In this document: positions 1 to 64,000 of the stretch, one piece after another
Layout: each line of letters begins with the position of its first letter
Numbering within the stretch: position 1 is the first letter of the stretch
Origin: Macrostomum lignano
Lineage: Eukaryota
Direction of reading: 5' to 3'
NCBI GenBank assembly: GCA_002269645.1
Contig: NIVC01000958.1
Location: 278,067 to 342,066, forward strand
Length of the DNA stretch: 64,000 nucleotides
Position numbers and translations under genes: made by a program
The notes under the pieces: model-generated
The model's database searches: none
The model's input: only the letters and a program-made list of their open reading frames with translations
Told to the model about the DNA's origin: nothing

Positions 1-119
1 GAGATAGCCAAGATGCGAACAGACTGGAATGCTAATGTAGCGACCTGAGTTCGAATCTTAGTAGTGCAAAAAGATTTTTTTTATTAAAACACCTTAAAAA
101 CACAACAAAACTGCTAAAC

Positions 120-2085
120 ATCAAAGAAGCGCAATGTCAAACATAGAAGAGCCAACATATCGAACATAAAAGAGTTACCATGTCAAACATTTAAGAGCTA
201 CCATGTCAAACATTTAAGAGCCACCATGTCAAACATAAAAGACCCACCATGTCAAACATAAAAGAGCCACCATGTCAAACATAAAAGAGCCACCATTTCG
301 AACATTAAAGAGCCACCATTTCGAACATTAAAGAGCCACCATTTTGAACATTAAAGAGCCGCCATGTCAAACATTAAAGAGCCACCATGTCAAACATAAA
401 AGAGCCACCATTTCGAACATTAAAGAGCCACCATGTCAAACATTTAAGAGCCACCATGTCAAACATTAAAGAGCCACCATTTCGAACATTAAAGAGCCAC
501 TATTTTGAACATTAAAGAGCCACCATTTTGAACATTAAAGAGCCACCATGTCAAACATTTAGGAGCCACCATGTCAAACATTAAAGAGCCACCATGTCGA
601 ACATAAAAGAGCCACCATGTTAAACATTAAAGGGCCACCATGTCAAACATAGAAGAGCCACCATGTCAGATATTACCAGTAAAAGGAGCCACCATGTCGA
701 ACACTAAAAAGCCACCATGTCAAACATATATGTGACTTTATGTAAAACATTAAAGAGCCACCATTTCGAACATTGAAGAGCCAGCATGTCGAACATTAAA
801 TAGCCAGCATGTCGAACATTAAAGAGCCACCATGTCGAACATTAAAGAGCCACCATGTAAAACATTAAAGAGCCACATTGTCAAACATAAAAGAGCCTTT
901 ATATCGTACATTAAAGAGCCACCATGTCGAACATTAAAGAGCCACCATGTCAAACATTTAAGAGCCACCATGTCAAACATTAAAGAGCCGCCATGTCAAA
1001 ACAAAAAAGTGCCATCATGTCAAACCTAAAAAAGCCACCATGTCAAACATTACAGAGCCATTATGTCAAACCTAAAAGAGCCACAATGTCGAACATTAAA
1101 AAGCCACCATGTCTAACAGTAAAGAGCCACCATGTCGAACAATTAGGAGCCACGTCAAACATTAAAGAGCCACCATGTCCAACATTAAAGAGCCACCATG
1201 TCAAACATTAAAGAGCCACTTTGTCCAACATTAAAGAGCCACCATGTAAAACATAAAAGAGCCAACATGTCAGACATTAAAAAGCCACCGTATCAAACAT
1301 AAAAGAGTTACCATCTAGAACAAAAAGATCCATCATGTCGAACATTAAAGAGCCACCATGTCAAACATTAAAGAGCCACCATGTCAAACATAAAAGAGCC
1401 AACATGTCAGACATAAAAGAGCCACCATGTCAGATATTAAAAAGCCACCGTATCAAACATAAAAGAGTTACCATGTAGAACAAAAAAGATCCACCATGTC
1501 GAACATAAAGAGCCACTATGTCAAACATTTAGGAGCCACCATGTCAAACATATATGTGACTTTATGTCAAACAATAAAGAGCCACCATTTCGTACATTAA
1601 AGAGCCACCATGTCGAACATTAAAGAACCACCATGTAGAATTTTAAAGAGCCACCATTTCGAACATTAAAGAGCCACCATGTCAAACATTTAGAAGCCAC
1701 CATGTCAAAGATTTAAGAGCCACCATGTCAAACATAAAAGAGCCACCATGTTAAACATTAAAGAGCCACCATGTCAAACATAGAAGAGCCACCATGTCAT
1801 AATAAAGAGAGCCACCATGTCGAACATAAAAGAGCCACCATGTCGAACATTAAAGATCCACCATGTCAAACATATATGTGACTTTATGTCAAACAATAAA
1901 GAGCCACCATTTCAAACATTAAAGAGCCACCATTTCGTACATTAAAGAGCCACCATGTCAAACATTAAAGGGCCACCATGTAGAACAGTAAAGAGCCACC
2001 ATGTCAAAAATAGAAGAGCCACCATGTCAAACATTAAAGAGCCACTATGTCGAACAGTAAAGAGCCACCAAGTCAAACATAGGAG
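120..2085 (+). repeat. 23-bp minisatellite (AACATTAAAGAGCCACCATGTC[A/G]) inside Helitron A
   Basis: Degenerate tandem copies, directly visible. Confidence 0.97.
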
Positions 2086-2179
2086 ACGCAATTTCAAATG
2101 TAAAAAGAAGCGTCATGCCAATCACAAAGGAGCCATTATAAAGCTAAGGAAATTGTTGCACTTGCTACTTATTGTCCGG

Positions 2180-2440
2180 TGGATGCTTGCTATTTAAGGA
2201 TCAATACTTGCTATCAATTGGTTGCTTGCTATCTGGGGTGCTTGCTATCTGGGGGTGCTTGCTATCTGGGGGTGCTTGCTAACTGGGGGTGCCTGCTATC
2301 TGGGGGTGCTTGCTATCTGGTGGTGCTTGCTATCTGGGGGGTGCTTGCTATCTGGGGGTGCTTGCTAACTGGGGGTGCCTGCTATCTGGGGGGGTGCTTG
2401 CTATCTGGAGGTGCTTGCTATCTGGGGGGATGCTTGCTGT
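2180..2440 (+). repeat. 16-18-bp minisatellite (TGCTTGCTATCTGGGGG) inside Helitron A 3' end
   Basis: Tandem copies visible; homologous to 16490-16750. Confidence 0.95.
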
Positions 2441-3867
2441 CTTAGGATGTTTTCTTTTTGCATTGCACTTTATCTGAACAGTTTTTCTATTGACTATGTG
2501 AAGGCTTTGTTTGACCATCTTATTGATACTTGCAGAGAACAGAGATTCTATCCAGATGTCCCCCATCGGGGGGCGAAGATTGCTAGTCCTATATACTAAA
2601 AATGAGTTGTCTGTATGTGGGTAGGTATGCGATAGATTTCAGAAAAAATGGCTCAACCGATTTTCTTCAAACTTGCACCATTCGATCAGAAATTTTCCTG
2701 GGACGGTACATGCATCTTGGCTAAGAAATTGCTCAATTTTAAAGGGATTAAATATTCGAAAAACATGCTTTTTTGCAAAGGTCAAGCAGCTCTTTCGACC
2801 TGAAATGCATTGTAAAAATGCTAGAGAAAAAACTGACTGACTGAATTCTGATTGTGATAAAGATTGCATAACAGCTGAATTGTACCTCCGCCTTGAATTG
2901 CGTCACAGTGTTGAAAACACTGTGTAGAAGCATATTACGAGACTTGATTTAGACTGCGTAACCATACTGACCGATTGAAAAATTGATTATGTCATAACTG
3001 CTTCGTGCTCATCTTATAGTGTAATTTTTGTTAAACATAAAAGAAGCGTCAAGAAAAACCTAAAAAATGCTAGCGTCTAGGCTTACTAATTCAAAACCAC
3101 AAGTGTCATAAAAATCGTAAAAGAAGTGTCATTTTAAGCATGAAAAGTTCCTGTAAAGCATAGAAGAAGCGCGAATATTCAAATAACACACATGCCTTTC
3201 TGAAAGGGTCAAGCAGAACTTCCTACTGTGAGCCATTCTGATTGGAATTAAACTTTGCAGCGCCCAGTAAAGTAGTATTTTTTGTCGCCAGGCTAGAGAA
3301 CTATAAATGTAGACTGCGAGAAAAGATTGTACATTATAAAATCTTCCCGTGCACAATTGACAAACTAACTTTAAATGCTGGAGAGAGGGAGAGTGAGAGA
3401 GTGAAATACATGCACATATATACAGTATCTAATTGATTCACAATATACGAACCATGTTTGAGACTGACCCTCCAAAATGTAATAAAACCGTCTGATTATA
3501 AAAAAGTCCAAAAGTGCCACAGAGATAGATGTACATTGGCTACTGAGGCTTGCGCCTCCTTCAGAAAATTTATCTGAATCCTTTCACATAGGAGAGTTAG
3601 AGTTAGGTGTTTGAGAGAGAGTATTGAATAATAAAAAGAGTCCTGACCAATTAGCAGGCGGGTATTGGAGAGAATTTAGGCTTGCTGTACACACTGACAG
3701 TCTAACAGTGTACAAATGGTGTCCAGCTTTTTGGGATTGGGTGGTTGCTGAGTTTAAAACGCGTGACATTATAGACTTCATACCTTTCTCTTTTCTCGCA
3801 CACAACCCCTACTATCCTTTCTTTTCATTATAACTCAAAATTCTTATCTTTCAATTTGAATTCCAAT

Positions 3868-6800
3868 ATGGCTCGACGTGGCACCAGCGCATTGAAGAAG
3901 AGCAGAGATGCCAAGAAGAAGCGTCAGCAAGAGAGTGCCGTTGAGCGAGAGGAGCGGCTGGCTGGACTGCGGCAGCAGAAAAATGAGCGAACGGCCATGG
4001 AGACTGACTCGCAGCGAGAAGAGCGGTTGGCTGGACTGCGGCAGCAGAAGGCTGAGCGAACGGCCATGGAGACTGACGCGCAGCGAGAAGAGCGGCTGGC
4101 TGGACACCGGCAGCAGGAGGCTGAGCGAAGGGCAACTGAAACCGACGCTCAGCGAGAAGAGCGCCTGACGAGACTCCGGCAGGAAAATGCTGAGCGAAGG
4201 GCAACGGAAACAGACGCTCAGCGAGAAGAGCGTAGATCTGGAGACAGAACTCGTGCGGAGAAGCGACGCGCTTCAGAAACCGAAGAGCAACGAAGAGCTC
4301 GAGTGGAAGCCGAGCAAATTCGCCGTCGAGGAGTGTCGGCTGGCAGGTAGGATGACATTTTAATTGGAGCTATATATTTTATAGCTATATAAAATCCAAG
4401 TGCCCTTTGTGCCTAATTCGGGGTATTTTCTATCTTAGCTGATGTTTTATTGGTACTTGGGCATATAATTAAAAACTGGAATCTGTTTCGTGCATTTTTT
4501 CTCATCTTTTCAAGTCGATTGCTTTCCAAGAGTTTTATTTAAGAGATCAGTATAGAATAGCATAAAATTTATTCGTCACTACTTTAATTACCGGCAAATG
4601 AAGTTGTGTATAATTTTTTTCCTATATTCCAGGTTTGATAGTAGTGAGTTGGCCACACCGTCTGTGGTACCTTTTGATGCGTTGCGCATAATTCGCATTC
4701 CTGGTGATGGGAACTGTTTTTTTTATGCAGTCTGTGATCAGTTGCAGGGCACTCCACTTGAGACCGATGCGGCATCTTTAAGACACGAGCTGACGAGCCG
4801 TGTAGTGCAGATTATGCCAGAATTGATTGAACAAGGCTTTGTTTTGCCAGAAAATGCTGATTTCATTGTTGATTCCTCTTTTTCTGAAGGCACATATGTG
4901 CCTGATGAAGTTGTTCCGCTTTTAAGCCGTTGTTTTAATGTTGATCTGGTGATTTATCAAGAAAACGGCACTGTACTGCAGTACTGTATGTCCCCTTTGC
5001 AGCCACCGATTGCAATCGTCCGAATTCTTTTGCGTCATGAGCATTATGAGTCATTGCGATTTGCTAATCCGATTCCAGTTTCTGAGCCCATTGTAGATGC
5101 AGAGGAGCCAAGATTAACTCAGCAGAGTGCAGGTCATTTTGGCGCAAGACCTGCTCAAGAGAGGTAGGTCATTGGTGTGACTGGTCATCATAATTTATTT
5201 GTCATCGAACTCAAGTTGTTTTATTCCAATAAATTTTTTTGTAAACTGAAAGATTAACTGGGAAAACTGTTTGCCATTAATCCTTCCTAATCCTAATCCT
5301 TCTAATCACAGGCCAGAACGGATTATCAGGCCTGAAGCGCCAGCCCATAACTGTGGCCCAATGGACAGAGCATGCGACCAATGCGGTGCATTACTTTGGT
5401 GCTCTGAGACGAGGAATTTCTGCTGCGCCAAAGGCAAGGTGAAGCTGCCCAGCCGCACCGTGCCTCAAGTGCTGGCAGATCTGTACCTGGGGCGGCACAG
5501 AATGAGTGCCGAGTTTCTGACCAACATTCGGAGTTACAACTCGGCGCTGCACCTGACATCGCTGGGTGCCAAACTGCGGTTGGTGCCAGGCTGGTGTCCC
5601 AGCTTCATCATCAGCGGCCAGTTGCATCACAACACGGCGCCGCTGTTTGCAGAGGATTCAGCTGAGCCCCATGGCTGGCAGGTGTATTTCAATGATCGCG
5701 AACTTGAAAGCCGCCAGAGTCTCAGCCAGAAGGTGAAGCCGGAGCTACTGGAGCTATTGCAGACGCTGCTTCACGAGTGCAACGGCTATGTCCGCAGCCT
5801 GAGGGCAGTCGCTCATCGAATCAGTCAAGATCCGGAGTTGGGAGATGCGCGAATCGTAATTCACCCTGACCGTCGACCATCTGGGGAACACATTCGGTAT
5901 GTCTGCAAGACATTCTAATAAGATATTTTGCGTAATAAATTATCCAATTATCCAATTTGTACAGACTCTGTATCCCACAAACTCCGTTCAAAATCAGGCG
6001 CTACAACTTGCCTACGGCGAACGAGGTCGGTATCCTAATTGTAGAGGACAATGAGAACACACCGGCCAGTCGGGACGTCGTGATTCAACTGCGTGGTGGC
6101 GGTTCCCAGAGAATCAGCGAGACACACCGCTCATATGACCCGCTGGAGTATGTGCTGCTGTTCCCGAATGGCGAAGATGGCTGGCACCCGGAGTTGCTGA
6201 TGAGTAATGGCAAGAAATTAACGCCCATGAAATACTATGCGAGCGAAATCATGGTGCGAGCGGGCCAGTTCAGTGTGCTGCACTATGGCCGAAGATTATT
6301 TCAGCAGTACTTGGTGGACATGTGTGCCAAGATTGAGGCAGAGAGGCTGCTGTATTTGCGGACCCATCAGCAGGACCTGCGCAGCGAGACATACAGCGGT
6401 CTGCGGGACGCTCTGTTTGCAGCTGATGGCAGGTCTACCGACAGAGATCCGAGTGACATAGGCAAGCCCGCGCATGTGCTTCTGTCTTCGAGCTTCGTTG
6501 GCGGGCCAAGGTACCTGATGGAGAGGCTACAGGACGCTATGACCTATGTTCACAAGTTCGGTAAGCCGGACCTGTTTGTCACCGCAACGTGCAATCCGAA
6601 ATGGCCGGAGATCAGCGCTCAGCTGCTGCCTGGACAGCGGGCAGAAGACCGGCCGGACATTGTTAGCCGAGTCTTTGAAATGAAGAGGAAAGCTCTTCTG
6701 GCCCAGTTGACCAAGCGCTATGGGAAAGAGGCCGCTCACGTTTGCTCACTGGAGTACCAGAAGCGTGGTGAGTAAAAATTCTGACTTGCAAGAATCAAAG

Positions 6801-9800
6801 TTTTAAGATTTATTAAAATTTAGATTTACAAAGGTTTTGTGATATTTTTTAATACTTTTTTGACGCTCCAGGTCTTCCCCATGTGCACTTTCTGCTGTGG
6901 CTCGTGAGCGGTCAGCGAGTGACTCCGGACCGATACGATGACATCGTGTCTGCCGAGATTCCGGACCCAGAGCAGCAGCCTGTGCTGTATGAGCTGGTGA
7001 AGACGCACATGATCCATGGCCCCTGCGGCAAGGAGAATCCGGCGTGTCCTTGCATGGAGAATGGCGAATGCAGCAAGGGCTTTCCGAAAGAGTTCCAGCA
7101 GGTGACGCTGACCAGCGATACTGGCTACCCACTGTACCGCAGACTATCGCCTGAGATGGGCGGATTTACAGTGGACAAACTGTTCAAAGGCCGGAGCATT
7201 CGCATGGACAACAGGGAAGTTCAAACGCTAATATATTGCTTAGTTGTGCATTGCAGCTTTTGTTTCTGAAAGTTAATGATATTATTTTTTCATTAAAACA
7301 GGTGGGTCGTTCCGTACAGCCCTGACCTGTTGCTCCAGTTTGCGTGCCACTTGAACGTCGAAGTTTGCGCCACTGTGAAGTCGGTCAAGTACGTGATCAA
7401 GTACCTGTTAAAGGGTGGCGACATGGCGACGCTCAAAGTCGATGCCAATAGGAATTCTACTGAACCGAGAGAGCAGGCAGTGGGTGACCAGCAGCCGACG
7501 CAAACGACAGGAAATAAGCCGCGTGATGAGATTAAGGAGTACCTGTCCGCGCGCTACATTGGTCCAATGGAAGCCGTGAATACCATCTTGGGCTTTGAAG
7601 TAATTCGCATTCTAATTATTATTGGCTCATTTTAACCAGAGCTGTGAAACCTCGTCATAGTATAAATTGAATTTCCATCGAAACTTAAAGGCTGTATATT
7701 TTCCTTCCACTTTCTGATCAGGTGCACAACAGGTTTCCGGCGGTCATCCGACTCTGCGTTCACAAGTCGGAAGAGCAGCTCGTGTATTTCAACGAGGGGA
7801 CCGCAAGAGCAAAAGCGAGAACGCCGAAGGATTCGACGTTGACGGCATTTTTCAAGCTGTGCCGTATTGACGAATTTGCTGGGTCCTTGCTCTACACGGA
7901 GGTGCCGTCCTACTTTGTGTGGCACTCCAGCGAAAGAGAGTGGCGGCGGGCCAAGCAGGGTGTGCGAGTCGATGGCCATCCGGGTGTAGTGCGGAACAAA
8001 AACGTTGCACGCATGTACACGGTGAGTCCAAGAGCAGGTGATTTATTTTATGTTCGAATGCTCCTTTTGAATGTTAGGGGACCGACTAGCTTCGAGGCGC
8101 TGCAGACCGTGGACGGCGTTGTGCATCCGAGCGCCAAGGCTGCTTGCATGGCCCTTGGCCTGCTGCAGCGAGATGATCACTGGCGGCGGTGTCTAGCTGA
8201 GGCCGTTCAGTCAAGAATGCCAAGAGCCCTGAGACATCTTCTGGCCGTAATTCTCATATGGGGTGAGCCTGAGGATGGCAGCGACCTCTGGTGCAGTTTT
8301 GCCGAGGATCTCAGCGAGGACCTGCGGTTCCACCACCGAGACTTGAGCACCGAGGAGATTACTGACCTGGCGCTGCGTGAGCTTCAGAGCATGCTGATCT
8401 CCATGGGCGGGAGAAGCCTGCCAGAGTACGGCCTGCCTGCGGCCTCCGTGACACCTCAAGATGGACCAATGCAGTTTGATACGGTTGAGCAAGCACTGAT
8501 TACTGAGGCGCGCTTACCAATGCTGACAGATGAGCAGAAAGCGGTGTACGAGTCCGTGACTCAGAATCTTGTGGACGGCACCAGCGGCTTGCACTTCCTG
8601 GACGCACCTGCTGGCACTGGCAAGACCTTCCTGCTAGAGGTTCTGCTAGCCTTCGTGCGCAGCCGGGGTGAAGTCGCCCTCGCCGTTGCGGCTTCTGGAA
8701 TCGCAGCGACTCTTTGGCCAGGTGGACAGACGGCGCATTCAACGTGAGTAATTTATTGTCAATATTTCAAAAAGCAGTTGTAAATATTTCGTGTGCTGTA
8801 AATATGTTAGGCATGGTGAAACTATTTGTCTATGCCAGGTTCAAGATACCAATTCGGGCGATCCGTTCGAGCAAAGACGTGTGCGCTGTTGGAGCGCAGT
8901 CCAAACAGGCCGCTGTATTTCGGACAGTGCGTCTAATTGTCTGGGACGAGATTTCTATGACAAACCGGAAGGATTTGGAGGCCGTCGACCGGTGCTTGCG
9001 AGACGTGCGGAAGCAGGACGTGCCATTCGGCGGAGTGGTTTTCGTTTGCGCTGGGGACTTTCGCCAGCTGCTGCCCGTTGTGGTGGATGGGACTCGAGCC
9101 AACAGCGTCATGGCGTGTGTCAGCAGATCCCCACTGTGGAAATTTTTCCGGCGGCATCGCCTTACAAGAAACATCCGATTGCTGAGCAGTTCCGATTCTG
9201 CAACGTATTTGAGATACACCGAGCTACTCAAGCAGGTAAGTTTGTTTTCATCAGTTTATTTATTGGAAGATTTAAGGATATTCGGTTTCTTTCGTGTTGA
9301 GAGCTCCATTTTAAAAATTGTGGCTTATTCAAGAATGCCTAGCTTAAAGTCTGTCTAGCGTTTTAAATATTTGACTTTTAACTCCCCCAGATCGGATCCG
9401 GAACAATTGAGCACCCTCTGGTAAATAAACCAGATAACACCACAAGATAATTTGCGAATCTTGTCAGATTCACTACCGATTTCCTTGTTTGAGTTGCGAA
9501 ACTGGTGAAACCACCAGATTCGTCACCAGGTAATTTTTTGTTTTCTTGTTTGACTGTTATCTGGTGAGTTATCTGAATTTCACCAGATAACATGGCCCGA
9601 ATCTTGCTTAGAAATCAGATTACATGACAAGATTCGCCACCAGATAATTTTTTGTTTTCTTGTTTGACTGTTATCTGGTGAGTTATCTGAATTTCACCAG
9701 ATAACATGGCCCGAATCTTGCTTAGAAATCAGATTACATGACAAGATTCGCCACCAGATAATTTTTTGTTTTCTTGTTTGACTGTTATCTGGTGAGTTAT

Positions 9801-12800
9801 CTGAATTTCACCAGATAACATGGCCCGAATCTTGCTTAGAAATCAGATTACATGACAAGATTTGCCACCAGATAATTTTTTGTTTTCTTGTTTGATTGAA
9901 TCTTGTTTGAATCGGAATTTCACAGGATAACATGGTGCGAATCTTGTTTGAAAATCAGATAACAGTACAAGATTCGCCATCAGGTAATTTTTTGTTTTCT
10001 TGGTTGATTGAATCTTGTTTGGATCGGAATTTCACAGGATAACATGGCGCAAATCTTGTTTGAAAGGCAGATAACAGTACAAGATTTAAATCAGGATAAC
10101 TGTGCATTATCTAGTCTGTAAGAAACCTGTGTGAATCTGAAATTTACCGGATAACAGGATGCAAATCTGGTTTGCAAACCAGATAATGGAAAAAGATTTC
10201 AATCAAGATGCCTTTGTGTTATCCGGTCTGTAAGAACCCGTTGTACTCGTACTTTTCACCCATAATTTTTTTCAGAATTTCGTGATCCAGGCCTAATTTA
10301 ATTGATTTCCAAGTGAAGGCCCGGATCAGCATTTTTAGCCTGGAATAGCCCCTTTTTTCCGGAAATGTGATCCTGCAAAAGTTCGGCAAAAAGGAAAGCT
10401 GTTCCGGCTGCATTTTCCGAAAATTTTCACCTTGAACACTGCTAAATTCTAATTGTAGACCCAAATTTCAGGTTTTCCAAATGAAAATGTTCTGGATGAG
10501 ATTTCAGGAGTTCAGTCGGAATTCCTCAGTGATCTAGACCAAGTGATTCGGCAAATCCACAGGGATCAGCTCCCATTGACTCGAATCTCGATGAAGTTAT
10601 GGATAAGACTGGACTTCGCGTCTGTTGTGGCTCAAGGCAGCTCATAAGCTGACCTGCGATGGATAATCAATCCTCGCTTCTGTTGTGGCTCAAGGCAGCT
10701 CATAAGCTGACCTGCGATGGATAATCAATCCTCGCTTCTGTTGGGACTCAAGGCAGCTAATAGCTGACCTGCGATGGATAATCAATCCTCGCTTCTGTTG
10801 TGGCTCAAGGCAGCTCATAAGCTGACCTGCGATGGATAATCAATCCTCGCTTCTGTTGGGACTCAAGGCAGCTAATAGCTGACCTGCGATGGATAATCAA
10901 TCCTCGCTTCTGTTGGGACTCAAGGCAGCTCATAAGCTGACCTGCGATGGATAATCAATCCTCGCTTCTGTTGTGGCTCAAGGCAGCTAATAGCTGACCT
11001 GCGATGGATAATCAATCCTCGCTTCTGTTGTGGCTCAAGGCAGCTGATATGCTGACCTGCGATGGATAATCAATCCTCGCTTCTGTTGGGACTCAAGGCA
11101 GCTGCTAAGCTGACCTGCGAGGGGTAAAGTGCCATATATCAGCAAACGCTAGCGCTCGTAATGTGAGGCCGTGCCCACCCTCCCTGCAGGTGATAGCTTT
11201 GTTGGCTCTCCGACAAACTATTGCATTCTTATTGTGCTGGAGAGGTTTGACTCCCAATGGCATGTAGTCTGTCGCGGTTACTTAGTGTATCAGATTACCC
11301 TATTATCTGGTGCAGCTGGGTGTCTAGATGGAGCTGTGGCATGGTTCCAAAAGCTCCTACTGGCCCAGTTCTAAGGTAGCCTTTTTTAAGACAGACGTTA
11401 TTCTAGCTCTTGCTAGAGCATGCTCCATTGGGTTGTCTAAAGCGTCTGCAGTGTTGGTGTATGGCCACCAGTGAGGGATAATTGAACCCCGCTTCAACCG
11501 ATGAATCAAAGTTGAGCAGTTGACTGAAAATGCTGACCTACGAGGGGTAATCAAACCTCGCGTCTGTTGTGGCTCAAGGCAGCTGCTAAGAGTAGTCACT
11601 TTTATTTGACTACGCGGGTCAATCTTTAATCCGAGGGGTAATAAAGCCTCGAAATTGCAAGGTGAATTGATCTGCTTTTCGGAGGCACTGTAGCGTCCGT
11701 AATGTGAGGCTGTGCCCATCCTCCGTACAGGTGACAATTGAAAAATTGTTGCGCCCTGTTTGTGTGCGAGAGGTTTGACTACCACTGGCATGCAGTCTGT
11801 CACAGCTGCTTAGTGTGTCAACGGGCTGAATGATTCTATCGTCTTATTTGACGCTTAGAAGCATGAGTCAGCCAACCATATTGTTTGGCACAGCTGGGTG
11901 TCTAGACGGAGACTGTGGCATGGTTCCAAATAGCTCTAACTGGCCCAGTATGCAAAGCAGCTTTCCTATTAAGATAGACGCTAATCCGATTTTTTTCGGT
12001 GCATGCTCCATTGGTTTGTCTAAGGCGTTTGCAGTTGCACCAGCCGTGAGCAGAACAAGTCAAGAGAGTAGTCGTTACAGACTACGAGTGTCGGTAATCT
12101 TGTCGAGATTTAATAAATCCTCGAACAAGTCAAGAGAGTAGTCGTTACAGACCATGAGTGTCGGCAATCTTGTCAGCCACTTTTTCCGGAGGGTGTCACT
12201 GCTTCGAACGACGCAGTTGATGACGCCGTTGGACGATCGTCCATCGCACTAGCGACATCTGCAACGCCAAGTCGGTTGGATATTACCGTTGGCACACGGG
12301 ATTGCGAAAACAATCAGGTAAGAGTTTCCAGCGTAGTCGGCATTTCGTGGACGCAACGAAGCCAGCGCCGCGCGAGCCGGCGCATCAGATGATACACCAT
12401 TCACTTTGTCTCCGGTCTACGAGCAGCCGATCAACGAAAGCCAGTTGATTCCGGACGACGACTATGCTACGAATGACAATTCTATCGACGTATGTTCTAT
12501 CACCTGTATGTACATTACTGTTTCTTTATAACTGTGTATATTTTGGAGAAACTGCCTTCCATCGCCATTTAATTTAACTTTAATATTGCAGAGTCGTTCC
12601 ATTGCGCCGGCATATAATGCAAGCCCCCGTCAGTGGTCTCATTAATCGCCTTCCACGCGCGCGACCCGATCTTTCAAACGTCTGGCTCACGCATCGACTG
12701 CCATCAGAGTCGCGTCCGAGTACAGCAGGTCCGACCTGCGACTCAGCACCAGCTCGCAGCAGATCACCAATTCAGTAGTATCAATTAGTATCCACAGTAT

Positions 12801-14481
12801 AAGTAGGTCTACTTATAACTGGACTGTCGAAACTCATACGTATGCCACGCTGTTCTCCAGAAGTTTTCGTTCCTGTTGAGCTTGTTCCTGTTCCTTGTTT
12901 AGTTTGTATAAGGCGCTCACAAAGTACAACCCGCTGTTAAATATAGAGAGGCTACTCATAAAATCTTGAATCACCAACTTCTTATACGCATCTTTACTGC
13001 GAAATTTGATGTCAATGCCTTCCGGCTTCTTTCACATGAATTACCCGACTGTTACCTGGTCAGCGAATCCTGTTTGCCAGACAGGATAACAAACAAGATA
13101 ACAAACAGGATAACACGATGTTTCCCTGCAGGATTCGCACGAATTATCCGGCTGTTACCTGGTCAGCGAATCCTGTTTGCCAGACAGGATAACAAACAAG
13201 ATAACAAACAGGATAACACGATGTTTCCCTGCAGGATTCGCATGAATTACCCGACTGTTACCTGGTCAGCGAATCCTGTTTGTCAGACAGGATAACAAAC
13301 AAGATAACAAACAGGATAACACGATGTTTCCCTGCAGGATTCGCACGAATTATCCGGCTGTTACCTGGTCAGCGAATCCTGTTTGCCAGACAGGATAACA
13401 AACAAGATAACAAACAGGATAACACGATGTTTCCCTGCAGGATTCGCATGAATTATCCGGCTGTTACCTGGTCAGCGAATCCTGTTTGCCAGACAGGATA
13501 ACAAACAAGATAACAAACAGGATAACACGATGTTTCCCTGCAGGATTCGCATGAATTACCCGACTGTTATCTGGTCAGCAAATCCTTTTTGAATCTTGTT
13601 TGAAACAAGGAAACGTAAGATTTCGTCACGCAAACAAGATTCATACAAGATAACATTTTGCATAACCGGAATAGGGCATGTTATCTTGTTTGAGCGAATG
13701 TTATCTTGTGGTGTTATCTGGTTTATTTACCAGAGGGCAGGATGCAGAGGAGAAAGTGTCTCTTCCTGCTGAGATCATCATTTCTGCGGAGGCGCCGCTC
13801 AATGATCTGATAAATTTTGTGTACCCATCGTTTGAGGCGTCAGTGGAGAGGGACGGCTACTTTGCAAGCCGAGCGATCCTGGCGCCGTACAATGACTCAG
13901 TGGATGCCATCAACGAGACGTGCCTGGGCATGTTTCCCGGCAGCCTGCGGGAGTACCGCTCAATAGACAGTGTGGCCGATGAGGATGCCGCTACGCACTT
14001 CCCGCCTGAGTTGCTCAACCAGCTGGATGCCCCGAACTTTCCGATTCACTTGCTGAGGCTAAAAGTGGGTATGCCAGTAGTTCTTCTCAGGAACATCAAC
14101 CCGCCACGATTGTGCAATGGTACGCGGCTCATCATACTCGCAATGGGCGAGAACGTGCTTAGATGCAAGATTGCCGCCGGCCAGTTCACGGGAGACGAGA
14201 TTCTTCTGCCGCGAATCCCGCTGATTCCTAGCAATGCGGACCTCCCCGTCAGTTTTAAGCGGCTGCAGTTCCCTGTGAAGCCGAGTTTCTGCCTGACGAT
14301 CCACAAGTCGCAGGGACAGTCTCTGGACACAGTTGGCATTGACCTGTCAGTCGGTTGCTTCACGCATGGCCAGCTGTACACGGCGCTGTCACGAGCAAAG
14401 AACGCGGCAAATGTTCGCGTCCGGATTCCGGGAACAAGGACCAGAAACGTTGTGTTTCCAGAAGTTCTCACTGAAGAGTAA
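3868..14481 (+). CDS. Helitron RepHel protein (STPR-like repeats, OTU protease, Zn finger, HUH Rep, Pif1-family helicase). Exons 3868-4346, 4633-5163, 5312-5896, 5998-6767, 6872-7214, 7302-7599, 7722-8743, 8839-9235, 9391-9413 joined to 13740-14481 once the nested element is removed
   Basis: Exon phases match at every junction and total 5190 nt (1729 aa + stop). Motifs: PGDGNCFFYAV and HEHY (OTU), CDQCGA..E..FCCAKGKV, PDLFVTATCNPKW, EYQKRG/LPHVHFL, KYVIKYLLKG, APAGTGKT, WDEISM, GDFRQLLPV, TIHKSQGQS, HGQLYTALSR. Intron 5 has a GG donor and the last exon is interrupted, so this copy may be disabled. Confidence 0.93.
9525..10090 (+). repeat. ~114-bp tandem subterminal repeat (left arm of nested transposon)
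   Basis: Period 114 (ATCTTGCTTA at 9601 and 9715); three near-identical copies then degenerate ones; rich in CAGATAAC/GTTATCTG. Confidence 0.9.
10615..11120 (+). repeat. 57-58-bp tandem repeat inside nested transposon
   Basis: About 9 copies of GCTTCTGTTG[TGG/GGA]CTCAAGGCAGCT..GCTGACCTGCGATGGATAATCAATCCTC. Confidence 0.95.
13039..13585 (+). repeat. 103-bp tandem subterminal repeat (right arm of nested transposon)
   Basis: CCTGGTCAGC at 13158, 13261, 13364; about 5 copies; rich in CAGGATAAC. Confidence 0.93.
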
Positions 14482-15614
14482 TTTATTTATCGCAAAAAAT
14501 GAGGGGTGAGCAATAATTTTCCTTATGCAAAAGGCTAGAAATTATATTCATTTATTTTTAAGGAAAAATAGAATAATTATTTCCCCATATCTCTTAAGTA
14601 ATAGCTCTCATTCTCTAAAGCAATAGCTGTCAATAGCTCTCATTCCTAAAAGAATCGCAGGAAACTTATTGCCCCAACCTCATTTCTAACGAAGCGTAGA
14701 TATTGCATGGCAGTGAGTACGAGCTAATAGCTGATGAACTTTATGTTGAAGCTCAATTAGGCTTATTTTATTCATTGTATTAATTTTTACAGTCAATTTG
14801 CACTTTACAGTTAATTTGTATTTTAAGGCAATTTCATATTAGCCGAAAGTAACTTTTGAAACAAACCTTCTTTTGCACTGCTTTTAATGAATTCAATCTT
14901 TGATGAGCAGTTAATTTTGTCTTTTATTTTTCACCTGAAATTTCATTATAATTCGTGTAAAAACTTTACTTATTTTATATCGCAAATTTATGCAAAAGAC
15001 GAAACAATTTTGTTTTTAGTTTTCCAAGGTTCGCAAAAACTTAACATCAGAGTGAATTTTAGTATATGGATTTTTACGCAAACTACGAGTGACAGTCTTT
15101 TTTTCAAAAATCAAAAATATCTCAAGTCACCTGTAACTGTAAGCTTATAAAAAACGATTTGCATCAACTTGCGACGTGGCCTTCGTCTTCCATATATTGA
15201 AAGTTGAATAATATACGAAACTCACAAGATGTCAATTTTAACTAAGGCGAAGGCCCTGAATGAAGCTTTTGTCTTACTTCATTTCTTAATCTTTGGCGAA
15301 ACAAATATGAATAGTCTGTGGCAAAGCGCAAAGGCTAAGGAAATAGAGCCGAACTGATTGTTTTGACTATGGATTTGAGGGCAGGAATGAGCGAATCCGA
15401 GGGCTGCGACTATAGACTAACGTAGAGTATTAAAGGAACTCATCTGGTCACATGCAGCCATTGCACACGCTATGTATACGTGACATATCGGTTGTACTTT
15501 TAATGCATTGTTCATAAGTTTCACTTTGTACTTTTCAAGTTTATTCGCGAAAAAATACAAAAAATTCTTGCGTTACAAACGTCAAAAACGTTTAACAAAA
15601 CGTTTAACAAACGT

Positions 15615-16385
15615 TAAAAATTAAAGAGCCACCATGTCTAACATTAAAGAGCCACCATGTCAAACATCAAAGAGCCACCATGCCAAACATTAAAGAGCCA
15701 CCATGTCAAACATAATAGGACCAACATGTCAAACATTAAAGAGCCACAATGTCAAGCATAAAAGGACCACCATATCGAACATTAAAGAGCCACCATGTCA
15801 AAAATAAAAAAGCCACCATGTAGAACATTAAAGAGCCATTATGTCAAACATAAAAGAGCCACCATGTCAAACATTAAAGAGCCACCATGTCAAACATAAA
15901 AGGACCAACATGTCAAACATTTAAGAGCCACCATGTGAAGCATAAAAGGACCACCATGTGTCGAGCATTAAAGAGCCACCATGTCTAACATTAAAGAGCC
16001 ACCATGTCTAACATTAAAGAGCCACCATGTCTAACATTAAAGAGCCACCATGTCTAACATTAAAGAGCCACCATGTCTAACATTAAAGAGCCATCATTAC
16101 ATTGAGGTGCCACCAGGTCAAACATTAAAGAGCCACCATGTCAATCATAAAAGAGCCACCATGTCCAACATATATGTGACTCCATGTCAAACATTAAATA
16201 GCCACCATGTCTAACATTAAAGAGCCACCATGTCGAACATTAAAGAGCCACCATGTCAAACATTAAAGAGCCACCATGTCGAACATTAAAGAGCCATCAT
16301 GTCAAACACTAAAGAGCCACTATGTCAAACATAAAAGAGCCACCATGTCAAACATAAAAGAGCCACCATGTCAAACATAAAAGAT
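15615..16385 (+). repeat. 23-bp minisatellite in Helitron B 3' region
   Basis: Same unit as 120-2085. Confidence 0.96.
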
Positions 16386-16489
16386 ACACAATTTCAAACG
16401 TAAAAGTAAGCGTCATGCCAATTTTAAAGGAGCCACTATAGAGCTAAGGAAATTGCAGCACTAGCTACTTATTGTCTGGTGGATGCTTA

Positions 16490-16750
16490 CTATTTGGGGA
16501 TGCTTGCTATCTGGGGGATGCTTGCAATCTGGGGGATGCTTGCTATCTGGGGGATGCTTGCTATCTGGGGGATGCTTGCTATCTGGGGGATGCTTGCTAT
16601 CTGGTGGATGCTTGCAATCTGGGGGATGCTTGCTATCTGGGGATGCTTGCTATCTGGGGGATGCTTGCTATCTGGGGGATGCTTGCTATCTGGGGGATGC
16701 TTGCTATCTGGGGGATGCTTGCAATCTGGGGGATGCTTGCTGTCTTGGGA
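16490..16750 (+). repeat. 18-bp minisatellite (TGCTTGCTATCTGGGGGA) in Helitron B 3' region
   Basis: Period 18 visible. Confidence 0.95.
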
Positions 16751-17289
16751 TGATTTCTTTTTGCATTACACTTTATTTGAGCAGTTTGTCTGTTGTCTTT
16801 GTGAAGGCTTTATTTGGCTGTCTTTTTGTTACTTGTAGAGAACAGAGATTCTATACAGATGTCCCCCAACGGGGGGCGAAGATTGCTAGTCTAGATAACT
16901 AACTGGAAGCGAAGGCTTTTTTGGGGGGCGGACACAACCGGGCCGAGTGGGAGCCTGCATGTTTTCTGGCTGCCTTATTCAACACAAATGTTTTCACTAA
17001 TAATTGGCTGCTGTTATTAAGAGTAATATTTAATTCTTTAAGTTTATTTTTTTAATTAACAAGTCAGTGCTTATTAAGAATCTCTAAAGGTATTTGTGAC
17101 ATATCTTAACAAAACTAATATTTTTGCAAAGCCGCAAAGTAAACACATAGGATCAGTAAAAAATCATAGTATGAACATAAATTAGCTGCTTAATCTAATC
17201 TATGAAGAAGATGCATCGCGGTACCATCGCCACTGCATCGCGGTACTTTCCGGCGATCGATTTCACCTGATGCATCGCGGTCAAACTCG

Positions 17290-20867: not shown

Positions 20868-23046
20868 TGGCGCCCCTTGGTGCTGGCGCCCCTTGGTGCT
20901 GGCGCCCCTTGTTGCTAAAGCCCCTTGGTGCTGGCGCCCCTTGGTGCTAAAGCCCCTTGGTGCTAAAGCCCCTTGGTGCTAAAGCCCCTTGGTGCTAAAG
21001 CCCCTTGGTGCTAAAGCCCCTTGGTGCTAAAGCCCCTTGGTGCTAAAGCCCCTTGGTGCTAAAGCCCCTTGGTGCTAAAGCCTCTTGGTGCTAAAGCCCC
21101 TTGGTGCTAAAGCCCCTTGGTGCTAAAGCCCCTTGGTGCTAAAGCCCCTTGGTGCTAAAGCCCCTTGGTGCTAAAGCCCCTTGGTGCTAAAGCCCCTTGG
21201 TGCTAAAGCCCCTTGGTGCTAAAGCCCCTTGGTGCTGGCGCCCTTGGTGCTGGCGCCCCTTGGTGCTGGCGCCCCTTGGTGCTGGCGCCCTTGGTGCTGG
21301 CGCCCCTTGGTGCTGGCGCCCCTTGGTGCTGGCGCCCCTTGGTGCTGGCGCCCCTTGGTGCTGGCGCCCCTTGGTGCTGGCGCCCCTTGGTGCTGGCGCC
21401 CCTTGGTGCTGGCGCCCCTTGGTGCTAAAGCCCCTTGGTGCTAAAGCCCCTTGGTGCTAAAGCCCCTTGGTGCTAAAGCCCCTTGGTGCTAAAGCCCCTT
21501 GGTGCTAAAGCCCCTTGGTGCTAAAGCCCCTTGGTGCTAAAGCCCCTTGGTGCTAAAGCCCCTTGGTGCTAAAGCCCCTTGGTGCTAAAGCCCCTTGGTG
21601 CTAAAGCCCCTTGGTGCTAAAGCCCCTTGGTGCTAAAGCCCCTTGGTGCTAAAGCCCCTTGGTGCTAAAGCCCCTTGGTGCTAAAGCCCCTTGGTGCTAA
21701 AGCCCCTTGGTGCTAAAGCCCCTTGGTGCTAAAGCCCCTTGGTGCTAAAGCCCCTTGGTGCTAAAGCCCCTTGGTGCTAAAGCCCCTTGGTGCTAAAGCC
21801 CCTTGGTGCTAAAGCCCCTTGGTGCTAAAGCCCCTTGGTGCTAAAGCCCCTTGGTGCTAAAGCCCCTTGGTGCTAAAGCCCCTTGGTGCTAAAGCCCCTT
21901 GGTGCTAAAGCCCCTTGGTGCTAAAGCCCCTTGGTGCTAAAGCCCCTTGGTGCTAAAGCCCCTTGGTGCTAAAGCCCCTTGGTGCTAAAGCCCCTTGGTG
22001 CTAAAGCCCCTTGGTGCTAAAGCCCCTTGGTGCTAAAGCCCCTTGGTGCTAAAGCCCCTTGGTGCTAAAGCCCCTTGGTGCTAAAGCCCCTTGGTGCTAA
22101 AGCCCCTTGGTGCTAAAGCCCCTTGGTGCTAAAGCCCCTTGGTGCTAAAGCCCCTTGGTGCTAAAGCCCCTTGGTGCTAAAGCCCCTTGGTGCTAAAGCC
22201 CCTTGGTGCTAAAGCCCCTTGGTGCTAAAGCCCCTTGGTGCTAAAGCCCCTTGGTGCTAAAGCCCCTTGGTGCTAAAGCCCCTTGGTGCTAAAGCCCCTT
22301 GGTGCTAAAGCCCCTTGGTGCTAAAGCCCCTTGGTGCTAAAGCCCCTTGGTGCTAAAGCCCCTTGGTGCTAAAGCCCCTTGGTGCTAAAGCCCCTTGGTG
22401 CTAAAGCCCCTTGGTGCTAAAGCCCCTTGGTGCTAAAGCCCCTTGGTGCTAAAGCCCCTTGGTGCTAAAGCCCCTTGGTGCTAAAGCCCCTTGGTGCTAA
22501 AGCCCCTTGGTGCTAAAGCCCCTTGGTGCTAAAGCCCCTTGGTGCTAAAGCCCCTTGGTGCTAAAGCCCCTTGGTGCTAAAGCCCCTTGGTGCTAAAGCC
22601 CCTTGGTGCTAAAGCCCCTTGGTGCTAAAGCCCCTTGGTGCTAAAGCCCCTTGGTGCTAAAGCCCCTTGGTGCTAAAGCCCCTTGGTGCTAAAGCCCCTT
22701 GGTGCTAAAGCCCCTTGGTGCTAAAGCCCCTTGGTGCTAAAGCCCCTTGGTGCTAAAGCCCCTTGGTGCTAAAGCCCCTTGGTGCTAAAGCCCCTTGGTG
22801 CTAAAGCCCCTTGGTGCTAAAGCCCCTTGGTGCTAAAGCCCCTTGGTGCTAAAGCCCCTTGGTGCTAAAGCCCCTTGGTGCTAAAGCCCCTTGGTGCTAA
22901 AGCCCCTTGGTGCTAAAGCCCCTTGGTGCTAAAGCCCCTTGGTGCTAAAGCCCCTTGGTGCTAAAGCCCCTTGGTGCTAAAGCCCCTTGGTGCTAAAGCC
23001 CCTTGGTGCTAAAGCCCCTTGGTGCTAAAGCCCCTTGGTGCTAAAG
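20868..23046 (+). repeat. 16-bp minisatellite with two variants (CCCCTTGGTGCTAAAG / CCCCTTGGTGCTGGCG)
   Basis: About 2.2 kb, nearly homogeneous, variants arranged in blocks. Confidence 0.99.
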
Positions 23047-63000: not shown

Positions 63001-64000
63001 GGCTCTGAGAGCCAGAGCCCCAAACAGACAGAGAAATCTGTTCGAGTTGTGTCTGTAGGTTAGGTGGACAGCTACTCCACAGCACTTCTAGCGATAATCT
63101 GAGCCAGGAGTCTCCGAGAGCCTCTCGTTACACATCCAGATGTTCTGCCTTGATGCTGGACTAGCTCACTTTCTAGAATCTGTTCTGATTGCATTCTAAC
63201 AAACTGAAGCATTTTCTGCACTAAACTTTCTCGGCGGCTCTGAGAGCCAGAGCCTAAACAGACAGAGAAATCTGTTTCGAGTTGTGTCTGTAGGTTAGGT
63301 GGATCAGCTACTTCACAGCACTTCTATGCGATAATCTGAGCCAGGAGTCTCCGAGAGCTCTCGTTACACATCCAGATGTTCTGCCTTGATGTTGGACTAG
63401 CTCACTTTCTAGGAATCTGTTCTGATTGCATTCTAACAAACTGAAGCATTTTCTGCACTAAACTTTCTCGGCGGCTCTGAGAGCCAGAGTCTAAACAGAC
63501 AGAGAAATCTGTTCGAGTTGTGTCTGTAGGTAGGTTAGGTGGACCAGCTACTCCACAGCACTTCTAGGCGATAATCTGAGCCAGGAGTCTCCGAGAGCCT
63601 CTCGTTACACATCCAGATGTTCTGCCTTGATGCTGGACTACTCACTTTCTAGGAATCTGTTCTGATTGCATTCTAACAAACTGAAGCATTTTCGGCACTA
63701 AACTTTCTCGGCGCTCTGAGAGCCAGAGTCTAAACAGACAGAGAATCTGTTCGAGTTGTGTCTGTAGGTTAGGTGGATCAGCTATCCACAGGCACTTCTA
63801 GGCGATAATCTGAGCAGAGTCTCCGAGAGCCTCTCGTTACACATCCAGATGTTCTGCCTTGATGTTGGCTAGCCTCACTTTCTAGGAATCTGTTCTGATT
63901 GCATTCTAACCAAACTGAAGCATTTTCCTGCACTAAACTTTCTCGCGGGCTCTGAGAGCCTGGCCTAAACAGACAGAGAAAATCTGTTCGAGTTGTGTCT
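54060..64000 (+). repeat. 237-238-bp satellite array (about 41 monomers), running off the window end
   Basis: AAACAGA anchor at 54434, 54672, 54909, 55147; monomers highly similar; ~70-bp subunits at the left edge and at ~55430 and ~56520. Confidence 0.99.

What the first reader, a model, noticed from the sequence alone, without database searches (positions are those of the whole stretch)
9391..13745. A 4.3-kb DNA transposon inside the helicase exon could be removed in frame as an intron (introner-like)
The left TIR supplies a donor (CTG|GTAAAT at 9421). The duplicated CA plus the host G makes a CAG acceptor at 13738-13740. Splicing 9420 to 13741 gives IEHPL-DAEE instead of IEQ-DAEE (+2 aa, frame kept). 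The TIR's own stronger-looking acceptor (TTTACCAG at 13733) would leave a 13-nt frameshifting footprint, so the outcome depends on acceptor choice. If the distal one is used, this is a parasite of a transposon that leaves its host transposase readable, and a route to new introns.
Basis: partly seen in the sequence, partly recalled or inferred. Interest (0 to 1): 0.75.

Follow-up and report, generated by a model that had tools for sequence, protein, structure and literature searches.

The report
Transposon nested in a flatworm Helitron
A 4.3-kb non-coding cut-and-paste transposon recently landed in the helicase exon of one copy of a young Helitron in the flatworm Macrostomum lignano; its ends do look like splice sites, but the sequence rules favour an out-of-frame product, so this is most likely an ordinary disruptive nested insertion.

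Summary
A 4,324-bp element (9414-13737) has perfect 37-bp inverted ends and a 2-bp CA duplication. It sits 23 nt into the last exon of a Helitron RepHel gene in Macrostomum lignano (GCA_002269645.1). Seven other genomic copies of this Helitron, about 99% identical, all have the empty site. So the insertion is private and recent.

The in-frame reading is poorly supported:
- **Acceptor choice.** The needed AG (13740) has two AGs 5 and 7 nt upstream and scores below all eight real acceptors of the gene. The end-encoded AG (13733) follows a 39-nt AG-free tract, like real acceptors (28-59 nt).
- **Frame.** Splicing between the two ends always leaves 13 nt, or 11 nt through a third AG at 13735. Both shift the frame in either orientation.
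- **Competing donors.** Stronger donors lie just inside the element.
- **Annotation.** A CDS (13678-14481) reads unspliced across all three candidate AGs.
- **Copy number.** No second copy was found, so exon or target bias is untestable here.

Spliced transposon ends (maize dSpm and Ds) and acceptors built from the target duplication (Micromonas introners) are already known. Interest is low to moderate.

The parts
2587..16889 (+). Host Helitron copy: 14,303 bp as it stands, 9,977 bp without the insert and one duplicated CA. It starts with 5' TC at 2587 and ends with a hairpin CCCCCAACGGGGGG plus CTAG at 16863-16889.
   Evidence: Four copies begin at the same TCCTATATAC. The 3' hairpin and CTAG were located. 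Copies are 98.9-99.6% identical over 5-7 kb.
3865..14481 (+). RepHel gene of the Helitron. Exons: 3865-4346, 4633-5163, 5312-5896, 5998-6767, 6872-7214, 7302-7599, 7722-8743, 8839-9235, and 9391-9413 joined to 13740-14481. About 1,729 aa are open once the introns and the insert are removed.
   Evidence: Conceptual translation has no internal stop. Pfam finds STPRs, Helitron_like_N, PIF1, Pif1_2B and UvrD_C_2. Annotated M. lignano proteins P0186 and P0182 match at about 99%.
9236..9390 (+). Intron 8 (155 nt, CAG|GTAAGT ... CCCCCAG|ATC). It lies immediately upstream of the interrupted exon.
   Evidence: The spliced product LLKQ|IGSG matches homologues.
9412..9413 (.). Left copy of the 2-bp target-site duplication (CA).
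   Evidence: Empty sites appear.
9414..13737 (.). Non-autonomous terminal-inverted-repeat DNA transposon, 4,324 bp.
   Evidence: Perfect inverted ends. Longest ORF is 148 aa. Its concatenated ORFs have no homologue in 5.8 billion proteins. It is absent from 7 paralogous sites.
9414..9450 (+). Left inverted end, CCCTCTGGTAAATAAACCAGATAACACCACAAGATAA. It holds the donor-like CTG|GTAAAT (GT at 9421-22), an AATAAA at 9424-29 and a local 6-bp hairpin.
9516..10236 (+). Left subterminal tandem arrays (114-bp and 112-bp units), rich in the motif C[AC][AG]GATAA. They contain stronger donor-like sites: CAG|GTAATT at 9530 and CTG|GTGAGT at 9564, 9678 and 9792.
10616..11127 (+). Internal 58-bp satellite, 8.9 copies.
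13031..13591 (+). Right subterminal array (103 bp x 5.4) with three motif copies per unit and acceptor-like TTTCCCTGCAG|G sites.
13701..13737 (+). Right inverted end. It carries the proximal acceptor-like TTTATTTACCAG| (AG at 13732-33) and a second AG at 13734-35.
13738..13740 (+). Right copy of the CA duplication plus the host G, forming the distal CAG that the in-frame reading needs.
13678..14481 (+). Chimeric ORF recorded as a called gene in this assembly (267 aa, P0001). Its ATG lies inside the element's right end, and it reads through the inverted end into the helicase C-terminus.

Best explanation
This is a recent, ordinary nested insertion.

**The element.** A non-autonomous cut-and-paste transposon has 37-bp inverted ends. 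It has about 0.7-0.8 kb of subterminal arrays at each end. These carry about 40 copies of the motif C[AC][AG]GATAA, presumably binding sites for a transposase supplied from elsewhere. It integrated at a CA dinucleotide 23 nt into the last exon of one copy of a young, multi-copy, transcribed Helitron of Macrostomum lignano, and duplicated the CA.

**Effect on the copy (shown).** The helicase frame is cut after ...GSGTIE. Read-through adds HPLVNKPDNTTR and then stops. This copy can no longer encode full-length RepHel.

**Inferred.**
- Other copies can supply RepHel, so the insertion costs the worm nothing and the Helitron family little.
- The CTG|GTAAAT and ATTTACCAG| splice-like signals are the two faces of one palindrome-forming CCAG/CTGG stretch of the end. 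They are most likely incidental.
- If the transcript is spliced at all, the expected junction is 9420 to 13734, the first AG after a 39-nt AG-free pyrimidine-rich tract. That leaves 13 nt and a frameshift, in competition with stronger donors inside the element and with read-through.
- The in-frame +6 nt isoform through 13740 would at best be minor.
For: - **Transposon hallmarks.** Inverted ends, duplication and empty site are confirmed.
- **Private to this copy.** All 7 other copies have the empty site, and copies are 98.9-99.6% identical.
- **Non-autonomous.** No long ORF and no homologue.
- **Motif enrichment.** The motif occurs 41 times in the element and once in the other 59.7 kb of the window.
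- **Read-through stop.** Shown.
- **Acceptor comparison.** All 8 real acceptors of the gene have 28-59 nt AG-free zones. AG 13733 has 39 nt, while 13740 has AGs 5 and 7 nt upstream.
- **Scores (my crude scale).** The distal acceptor scores 2.0, below all eight real ones (2.6-5.7). The proximal one scores 3.5. The end-encoded donor scores 7.1 bits and ranks 11th of 249 GTs in the element. Donors of 8.9-10.5 bits lie at 9530-9792.
- **Frame.** Splicing between the two ends leaves 13 or 11 nt in any orientation, by symmetry of the ends.
- **Annotation.** A CDS starts at 13678 and crosses all three AGs unspliced. The annotation was built from RNA-seq (PMC5730564).
- **Context.** The locus lies among satellites and tandem Helitron tails.
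Against: - No RNA reads were examined, so splicing outcomes are predictions.
- My scoring matrices are generic, not trained on M. lignano.
- Having both a decent donor and a decent acceptor inside one pair of ends is uncommon for random sequence (0.28%).
- The A of TTTAC at 13729 fits the branch-point consensus yUnAy (my reading of the sequence). If it were used, AG 13733 would be too close and a downstream AG would be favoured.
- The same Helitron family seems to have a GG-AG intron removed in annotated models. So the worm's splicing may be more permissive than the textbook rules I applied.
- The annotated CDS could arise from multi-mapped reads rather than from a true read-through transcript.
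Confidence: 0.75

Rival explanations
1. The element behaves as an introner-like intron. The donor in the left end pairs with the CAG made from the duplicated CA plus the host G. The element is removed with a +6 nt scar (Q becomes HPL), and the Helitron helicase stays functional.
For: - The arithmetic is exact.
- The scar falls in a non-conserved linker of 9-12 residues, at the edge of the PIF1 domain match.
- The donor at 7.1 bits is within the range of the gene's own donors, 4.5-12.7.
- The same trick, an element-borne donor plus an AG taken from the duplication, is described for Micromonas introner IE1 (PMC11282704).
- M. lignano introns average 1.1-1.4 kb, so a 4.3-kb intron is not outlandish (PMC5730564).
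- Joint donor and acceptor in one pair of ends is rare by chance.
Against: - The distal AG is third in a row and has the weakest context.
- The resulting linker of 13 residues exceeds the usual 9-12.
- Stronger internal donors compete, and an AATAAA overlaps the donor.
- The annotated CDS crosses the acceptors unspliced.
- Only one copy is known.
- The element is 4.3 kb, against the short MITE-like size of described introners.
- There is no selective reason to spare one of many dozens of redundant Helitron copies.
Confidence: 0.1
2. The splice signals in the ends are a family-level adaptation, as in maize dSpm and Ds or C. elegans Tc1. The element is routinely spliced from host transcripts between its two ends, in either orientation. 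This gives leaky rather than null alleles, even though the 13-nt scar is not frame-neutral.
For: - One 9-nt stretch gives a donor on one end and a pyrimidine tract plus CAG on the other. It works in both orientations, because the ends are perfect.
- The chance estimate is 0.28%.
- The proximal acceptor looks like the gene's real acceptors.
- Precedent, from my own knowledge: Menssen et al. 1990 EMBO J on splice sites at the En/Spm termini, Wessler's Ds work, and Rushforth and Anderson 1996 on Tc1.
Against: - A 13- or 11-nt scar still destroys coding exons, so the benefit would be confined to UTR insertions.
- CCAG/CTGG belongs to the repeated C[AC][AG]GATAA-type motif and to a local hairpin. 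That explains its presence without invoking splicing.
- There is a single copy and no RNA data.
- The chance test was post hoc.
Confidence: 0.12
3. Assembly artefact: a chimeric join placed unrelated repeat DNA inside the Helitron.
For: The assembly is repeat-rich and partly redundant (PMC5730564).
Against: The inserted block is bounded exactly by perfect 37-bp inverted repeats and a 2-bp duplication. Removing it restores, base for base, the sequence of five other copies. A misjoin would not do this.
Confidence: 0.02

Closest known systems
Defective Spm/En (dSpm/I) and Ds elements of maize spliced from host transcripts, for example a2-m1, bz-m13 and wx alleles (my own knowledge; CACTA architecture cited from PMC2613891)
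   Same: A non-autonomous inverted-end element with long subterminal arrays of a short binding motif, inserted in an exon. Donor- and acceptor-like sites lie in or next to its termini, so most of the element could be removed as a new intron, leaving a few extra nucleotides.
   Different: In maize the splicing was shown by cDNA analysis and partial gene function. Here nothing is shown at the RNA level. The duplication is 2 bp, not 3 or 8. The termini are CC...GG, not CACTA. The host is another transposon, not a cellular gene.
Introner elements, e.g. Micromonas pusilla IE1 (PMC11282704; PMC9860276)
   Same: An inverted-end, duplication-generating element that brings one splice site and could take the other AG from the duplication plus the flanking base.
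   Different: Introners are short, occur as hundreds to thousands of near-identical introns in genes, and are removed cleanly. This element is 4.3 kb, is known from one copy, has its donor 7 nt inside the end, and its natural acceptor gives a frameshift.
Nested transposon insertions (one transposon inside another)
   Same: An insertion into one redundant copy of another mobile element, in a satellite-rich region where it is neutral to the host.
   Different: Nothing essential. The only distinguishing point is the splice-like palindrome in the ends.
2-bp-duplication DNA transposon groups: CMC/CMCT (Mirage-like) and PHIS (ISL2EU-like) (PMC12730594)
   Same: The 2-bp duplication falls in the range reported for both groups. 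The subterminal repeat arrays resemble CACTA-type elements.
   Different: Most CMCT elements have 5'-CA...TG-3' termini, and this one has 5'-CC...GG-3'. No transposase is available to place it.

Membership tests
Class II non-autonomous terminal-inverted-repeat DNA transposon | Terminal inverted repeats | tested here: met
   37 of 37 nt complementary, at 9414-9450 and 13701-13737.
Class II non-autonomous terminal-inverted-repeat DNA transposon | Target-site duplication and a demonstrable empty site | tested here: met
   CA is duplicated. Seven paralogous Helitron copies have an uninterrupted site, and five are identical to the joined flanks.
Class II non-autonomous terminal-inverted-repeat DNA transposon | No transposase gene of its own | tested here: met
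   The longest ORF is 148 aa. A 1,052-aa concatenate of its ORFs found nothing at E<=0.01.
Class II non-autonomous terminal-inverted-repeat DNA transposon | More than one copy in the genome | tested here: inconclusive
   No copy in the rest of the window, in 142.5 kb of other M. lignano loci or in metagenome contigs. The full genome could not be searched.
Introner element | Many near-identical copies that are introns of unrelated genes | tested here: inconclusive
   Only one copy was seen. The genome-wide search is not possible with these tools.
Introner element | Splice sites at the element or duplication boundaries, so that removal is exact or frame-neutral | tested here: not met
   The end-encoded sites leave 13 or 11 nt. 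Only the disfavoured third AG gives +6 nt.
Introner element | Short, MITE-like size | tested here: not met
Introner element | Removal from RNA demonstrated | not testable with these tools
   No read-level RNA data. The only hint is an annotated CDS that crosses the candidate acceptors unspliced.
CMC/CMCT superfamily (CACTA, Mirage, Chapaev, Transib) | Duplication of 2-5 bp | tested here: met
   2 bp. The range is from PMC12730594.
CMC/CMCT superfamily (CACTA, Mirage, Chapaev, Transib) | 5'-CA...TG-3' termini (most members) | tested here: not met
   The termini are 5'-CCCTCTGG...CCAGAGGG-3'.
CMC/CMCT superfamily (CACTA, Mirage, Chapaev, Transib) | DDE transposase with C(2)C and H(3-4)H motifs | not testable with these tools
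   There is no transposase in this copy and no autonomous partner was found.
PHIS superfamily (ISL2EU-like) | 2-bp duplication | tested here: met
   2 bp. 0-, 2- or 3-bp duplications are reported for Harbinger relatives (PMC12730594).
PHIS superfamily (ISL2EU-like) | PHIS-type transposase | not testable with these tools
   No transposase is available.
Helitron (the host element) | 5' TC, 3' CTRR preceded by a hairpin, and a RepHel protein with HUH, Y and PIF1 helicase motifs | tested here: met
   TC at 2587. Hairpin plus CTAG at 16863-16889. Helitron_like_N plus PIF1. LPHVHFLLW and VKYVIKYL are present in the translation.

The most novel reading that the evidence does not exclude
The ends of this flatworm transposon family carry a symmetric splice cassette: CTG|GTAAAT on one end and ATTTACCAG| on the other. 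The cassette lets the element be spliced out in either orientation. At NA|G targets the duplication supplies a further AG that yields a +6 nt, frame-preserving scar. That would make it a large animal introner in the making, here caught inside another transposon's gene.
Probability: 0.07. Interest if true: 0.6.

Novelty: new member of a known kind. Interest (0 to 1): 0.25.

Why it matters
If the element were really spliced in frame, it would be a rare animal example of a transposon creating an intron at the moment of insertion. It would also be testable in a species with working transgenesis.

As the evidence stands, it documents three things:
- a very recent transposition of an apparently undescribed non-autonomous DNA transposon in M. 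lignano;
- a young, expressed Helitron family with at least eight near-identical genomic copies and more than 50 annotated proteins;
- a clean filled and empty site pair, useful for defining the element's ends and its 2-bp target duplication.

The conceptual point, that transposon ends can supply splice sites, is already established in maize, nematodes and introner-bearing protists.

Tried and rejected
1. **A second lesion in this copy.** I first took the GG at the start of intron 5 (7215-16, CAG|GGAAGT) for a private defect that would make 'leaves the transposase readable' moot. I rejected this because all seven other M. lignano copies carry the same GG, and annotated proteins splice that intron.
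2. **Other copies of the element.** All searches found nothing:
   - end probe in the window;
   - element against the window and loci L002-L008 by BLAST;
   - exact 25-mer of the end in metagenome contigs;
   - concatenated element ORFs against 5.8 billion proteins;
   - BLAST, fuzzy end probe and motif density in 142.5 kb of other M. lignano loci.
3. **RNA genes in the element.** Rfam gave only a sub-threshold mir-136-like hit (25.7 bits against a gathering score of 64, E = 0.09), which I discarded as chance.
4. **A hidden spliced protein.** I looked for a product containing IEHPLDAEE among annotated relatives. None of the retrieved members has it; all show IEQDAEE or IDQDAEE. Cluster listings are partial, though.
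5. **CMC membership.** Considered because of the 2-bp duplication and CACTA-like subterminal arrays. Not adopted, because the termini are not CA...TG and there is no transposase.
6. **A 3-bp duplication (GCA).** Considered and rejected, because it would make the two ends unequal by one base.
7. **Local RNA hairpins in the ends.** These are weak 6-bp stems and say little about splice-site use.


Full report
**Source and setting.** The window is part of contig NIVC01000958.1 of the Macrostomum lignano assembly GCA_002269645.1. The region is repeat-dense. It holds a dozen mini- and microsatellite arrays, and a 238-bp satellite fills 54180-64000. The first 2,586 bases are the tail of another Helitron copy.

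**The observation.**
- The two arms 9414-9450 and 13701-13737 are 37 nt long and perfectly complementary. A 28-nt probe from them hits nowhere else in the window.
- The block is flanked by CA on both sides: 9412-13 and 13738-39.
- Joining 9413 to 13740 restores an open helicase frame...LLKQIGSGTIEQDAEEKVSLPAEII....
- I fetched seven other genomic copies of the same Helitron from the same assembly (L009-L015). All are uninterrupted at this point. Five read ATCGGATCCGGAACAATTGAGCAGGATGCAG, exactly the joined flanks. Two have GACCAGGAT.
- A more distant relative from a Logan assembly is also continuous here, reading IGSGTLKQDAEEK.
- The insertion is therefore real and measures 4,324 bp plus a 2-bp target duplication. 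It is private to this copy. The copies are 98.9-99.6% identical and the ends are still perfect, so it is very recent.

**The inserted element.**
- It has no ORF longer than 148 aa. A 1,052-residue concatenate of its reading frames finds nothing among 5.8 billion proteins. Rfam finds nothing credible.
- Its architecture is that of a non-autonomous cut-and-paste transposon:
  - the 37-bp inverted ends;
  - a left subterminal region of 114- and 112-bp tandem units (9516-10236);
  - a right one of 103-bp units (13031-13591);
  - an internal 58-bp satellite (10616-11127).
- The short motif C[AC][AG]GATAA occurs 41 times in the element, and 40 of these lie within about 0.8 kb of an end. It occurs once in the remaining 59.7 kb of the window. 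This is the pattern expected of transposase- or accessory-protein-binding sites, as in CACTA elements (PMC2613891).
- A 2-bp duplication is reported for members of the CMC/CMCT and PHIS groups (PMC12730594). The termini here are CC...GG, not the CA...TG usual for CMCT, and there is no transposase. The superfamily stays open.

**The host.**
- The Helitron runs from a 5' TC at 2587, where four copies start at the same base, to a hairpin plus CTAG at 16863-16889.
- Its RepHel gene has nine exons. After conceptual removal of eight introns and the insert, it gives an open protein of about 1,729 residues. Pfam finds STPR repeats, Helitron_like_N, PIF1, Pif1_2B and UvrD_C_2 in it.
- The family is abundant and annotated. 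One 90% protein cluster has 52 members in M. lignano. The GenBank annotation was derived from RNA-seq with StringTie, TACO and TBONE, plus a de novo transcriptome (PMC5730564). So the family is transcribed.
- The insertion lies 23 nt downstream of intron 8 (9236-9390). In the protein it falls at the C-terminal edge of the PIF1 domain match.

**The splice arithmetic.**
- The donor-like CTG|GTAAAT has its GT at 9421-22.
- 9420 joined to 13741 replaces Q by HPL (+6 nt) and keeps the frame.
- 9420 joined to 13734 leaves 13 nt and stops after 22 codons.
- Two points were missed. There is a third AG at 13734-35, giving an 11-nt footprint that also shifts the frame. Skipping the 30-nt exon piece, by joining 9235 to 13741, would also be in frame at -24 nt.
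- The affected stretch is a non-conserved linker between the G-x-G motif and the [LIF]P motif. It is 9-12 residues in 66 of 69 homologues and 11 here. A 13-residue linker is just outside the usual range but plausibly tolerated.

**How likely is the in-frame route?** I compared the candidate sites with the gene's own introns.
- **AG-free zones.** All eight real acceptors are the first AG after an AG-free stretch of 28-59 nt. The end-encoded AG at 13733 follows 39 AG-free, pyrimidine-rich nt and looks just like them. The distal AG at 13740 has two AGs 5 and 7 nt upstream.
- **Acceptor scores.** On a crude acceptor score of my own, the distal site (2.0) falls below every real acceptor (2.6-5.7). 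The proximal one scores 3.5.
- **Donor scores.** With a generic donor matrix, the end-encoded donor scores 7.1 bits, inside the range of the gene's donors (4.5-12.7). It ranks 11th of 249 GTs in the element. Donors of 8.9-10.5 bits follow at 9530, 9564, 9678 and 9792.
- **Poly(A) signal.** An AATAAA overlaps the end-encoded donor.
- **Symmetry.** The ends are perfect, so the same sites exist in either orientation. Splicing between the two ends always leaves 7+4+2 = 13 nt. The ends are thus not arranged for frame-neutral removal. The +6 outcome depends on a host G that happens to follow the duplicated CA.
- **Annotation.** The annotation holds a 267-aa CDS starting at an ATG at 13678 inside the element and running through all three AGs. 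This suggests coverage across the border without splicing. Multi-mapped reads could produce such a model, so it is only a hint.

- One 9-nt stretch supplies both a usable donor and, on the other end, a pyrimidine tract plus CAG. When I used random window 60-mers as hypothetical ends, only 0.28% gave both at equal or better score.
- The idea of taking the acceptor AG from the duplication is exactly what is described for Micromonas introner IE1 (PMC11282704).
- A branch-point-like TTTAC at 13726-30 (my reading) would, if used, put AG 13733 too close and favour a downstream AG.
- This worm may splice permissively. Intron 5 of this Helitron begins GG in all eight copies, yet it is removed in several annotated proteins.
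- These points keep the hypothesis alive, but none is evidence that the junction exists.
- CCAG/CTGG is also part of the repeated binding-type motif and of a small hairpin within each end. That explains its presence without invoking splicing.

**Conclusion.**
- The most probable account is a plain, recent nested insertion. It knocks out the helicase of one redundant Helitron copy in a repeat-rich region, where it is neutral.
- Selection to keep that copy 'readable' has no obvious basis, because other copies can supply RepHel.
- If the pre-mRNA is spliced across the element, the predicted main product carries a 13-nt frameshifting scar. The in-frame isoform would be minor.
- It fails the tests for an introner that could be applied: size and clean or frame-neutral removal. 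The multi-copy and RNA tests could not be done.
- It works most like the maize dSpm and Ds cases, in which terminal splice sites let a transposon act as a new, imprecise intron (my own knowledge of Menssen et al. 1990 and Wessler's work). It is not shown to do so.
- I rate it a new member of a known kind, of low to moderate interest. A cheap decisive test is available: counting junction k-mers in public RNA-seq.

Noticed in passing
window 7215-7301 (intron 5 of the RepHel gene); also L009:11855, L010:13407, L011:9069, L012:9793, L013:1550, L014/L015:12904: Intron 5 begins GG, not GT (CAG|GGAAGT ... AAAACAG|G). No placement of the 87-nt gap gives canonical ends. All eight M. lignano copies share the GG. 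The related Helitron L002 has CAG|GTGAGT at the same position. Annotated proteins P0186, P0185 and P0121 have the intron removed (DNRWVVPY), while P0184 and P0191 retain it and stop (DNREVQTLIYCLVVHCSFCF*). This may be a genuinely spliced GG-AG intron in a recently amplified Helitron.
   Followed up: partly
window 8744-8838 (intron 7) versus L002:4097-4160: This 95-nt intron, splitting the codon after TAHS, is present in the window's family and at the same position in L008 with a different sequence. It is absent from the L002-L007 lineage, where QTAHSTFKIP is continuous. So related Helitron lineages differ in intron presence.
   Followed up: partly
window 1-2586 and 2560-2587: A Helitron 3' end (hairpin CCCCCATCGGGGGG plus CTAG at 2560-2586) abuts the 5' TC of the studied Helitron, with no base between them. 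Bases 1-2586 match the tail 15613-16889, including the 23-bp minisatellite, at 80-85%. This is a head-to-tail tandem arrangement, and L009 shows similar repeated tails.
   Followed up: partly
window 13678-14481: A chimeric ORF recorded as a gene for this assembly. Its start codon and first 20 residues (MLSCLSECYLVVLSGLFTRG) come from the transposon's right end and are fused in frame to the last 247 residues of the helicase.
   Followed up: partly
window 9424-9429: A canonical AATAAA lies inside the left inverted end, overlapping the donor-like GTAAAT. It is one of only three AATAAA on the + strand of the element, and could cause premature polyadenylation of read-in transcripts.
   Followed up: no
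window 12160-12600: The inner part of the element has exon-like pieces with strong splice signals: CAG|GTAAGA at 12318 (11.1 bits) and an acceptor-like ...TATTGCAG|AGTCG around 12591. They have no detectable homologue. They could be remains of a captured or transposase-related gene.
   Followed up: no
window 54180-64000; 51493-52980; 20872-23046; 41799-43848: The right half of the window is mostly satellites: a 238-bp satellite of about 40 units at 98% identity running to the window's end, (AGAC)n of 1.5 kb, a 16-bp repeat x136, and a 14-bp repeat x145 with a 479-bp higher-order period.
   Followed up: no
window 8720-8735; 7430-7440: This copy has private amino-acid changes relative to the other annotated copies. 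Examples are GIAATLWPGG against GIAATLLPGG in the helicase, VVVDGTRAN against VVVHGTRAN, and MATLKVD against MATFKVD. Otherwise it is open throughout.
   Followed up: no
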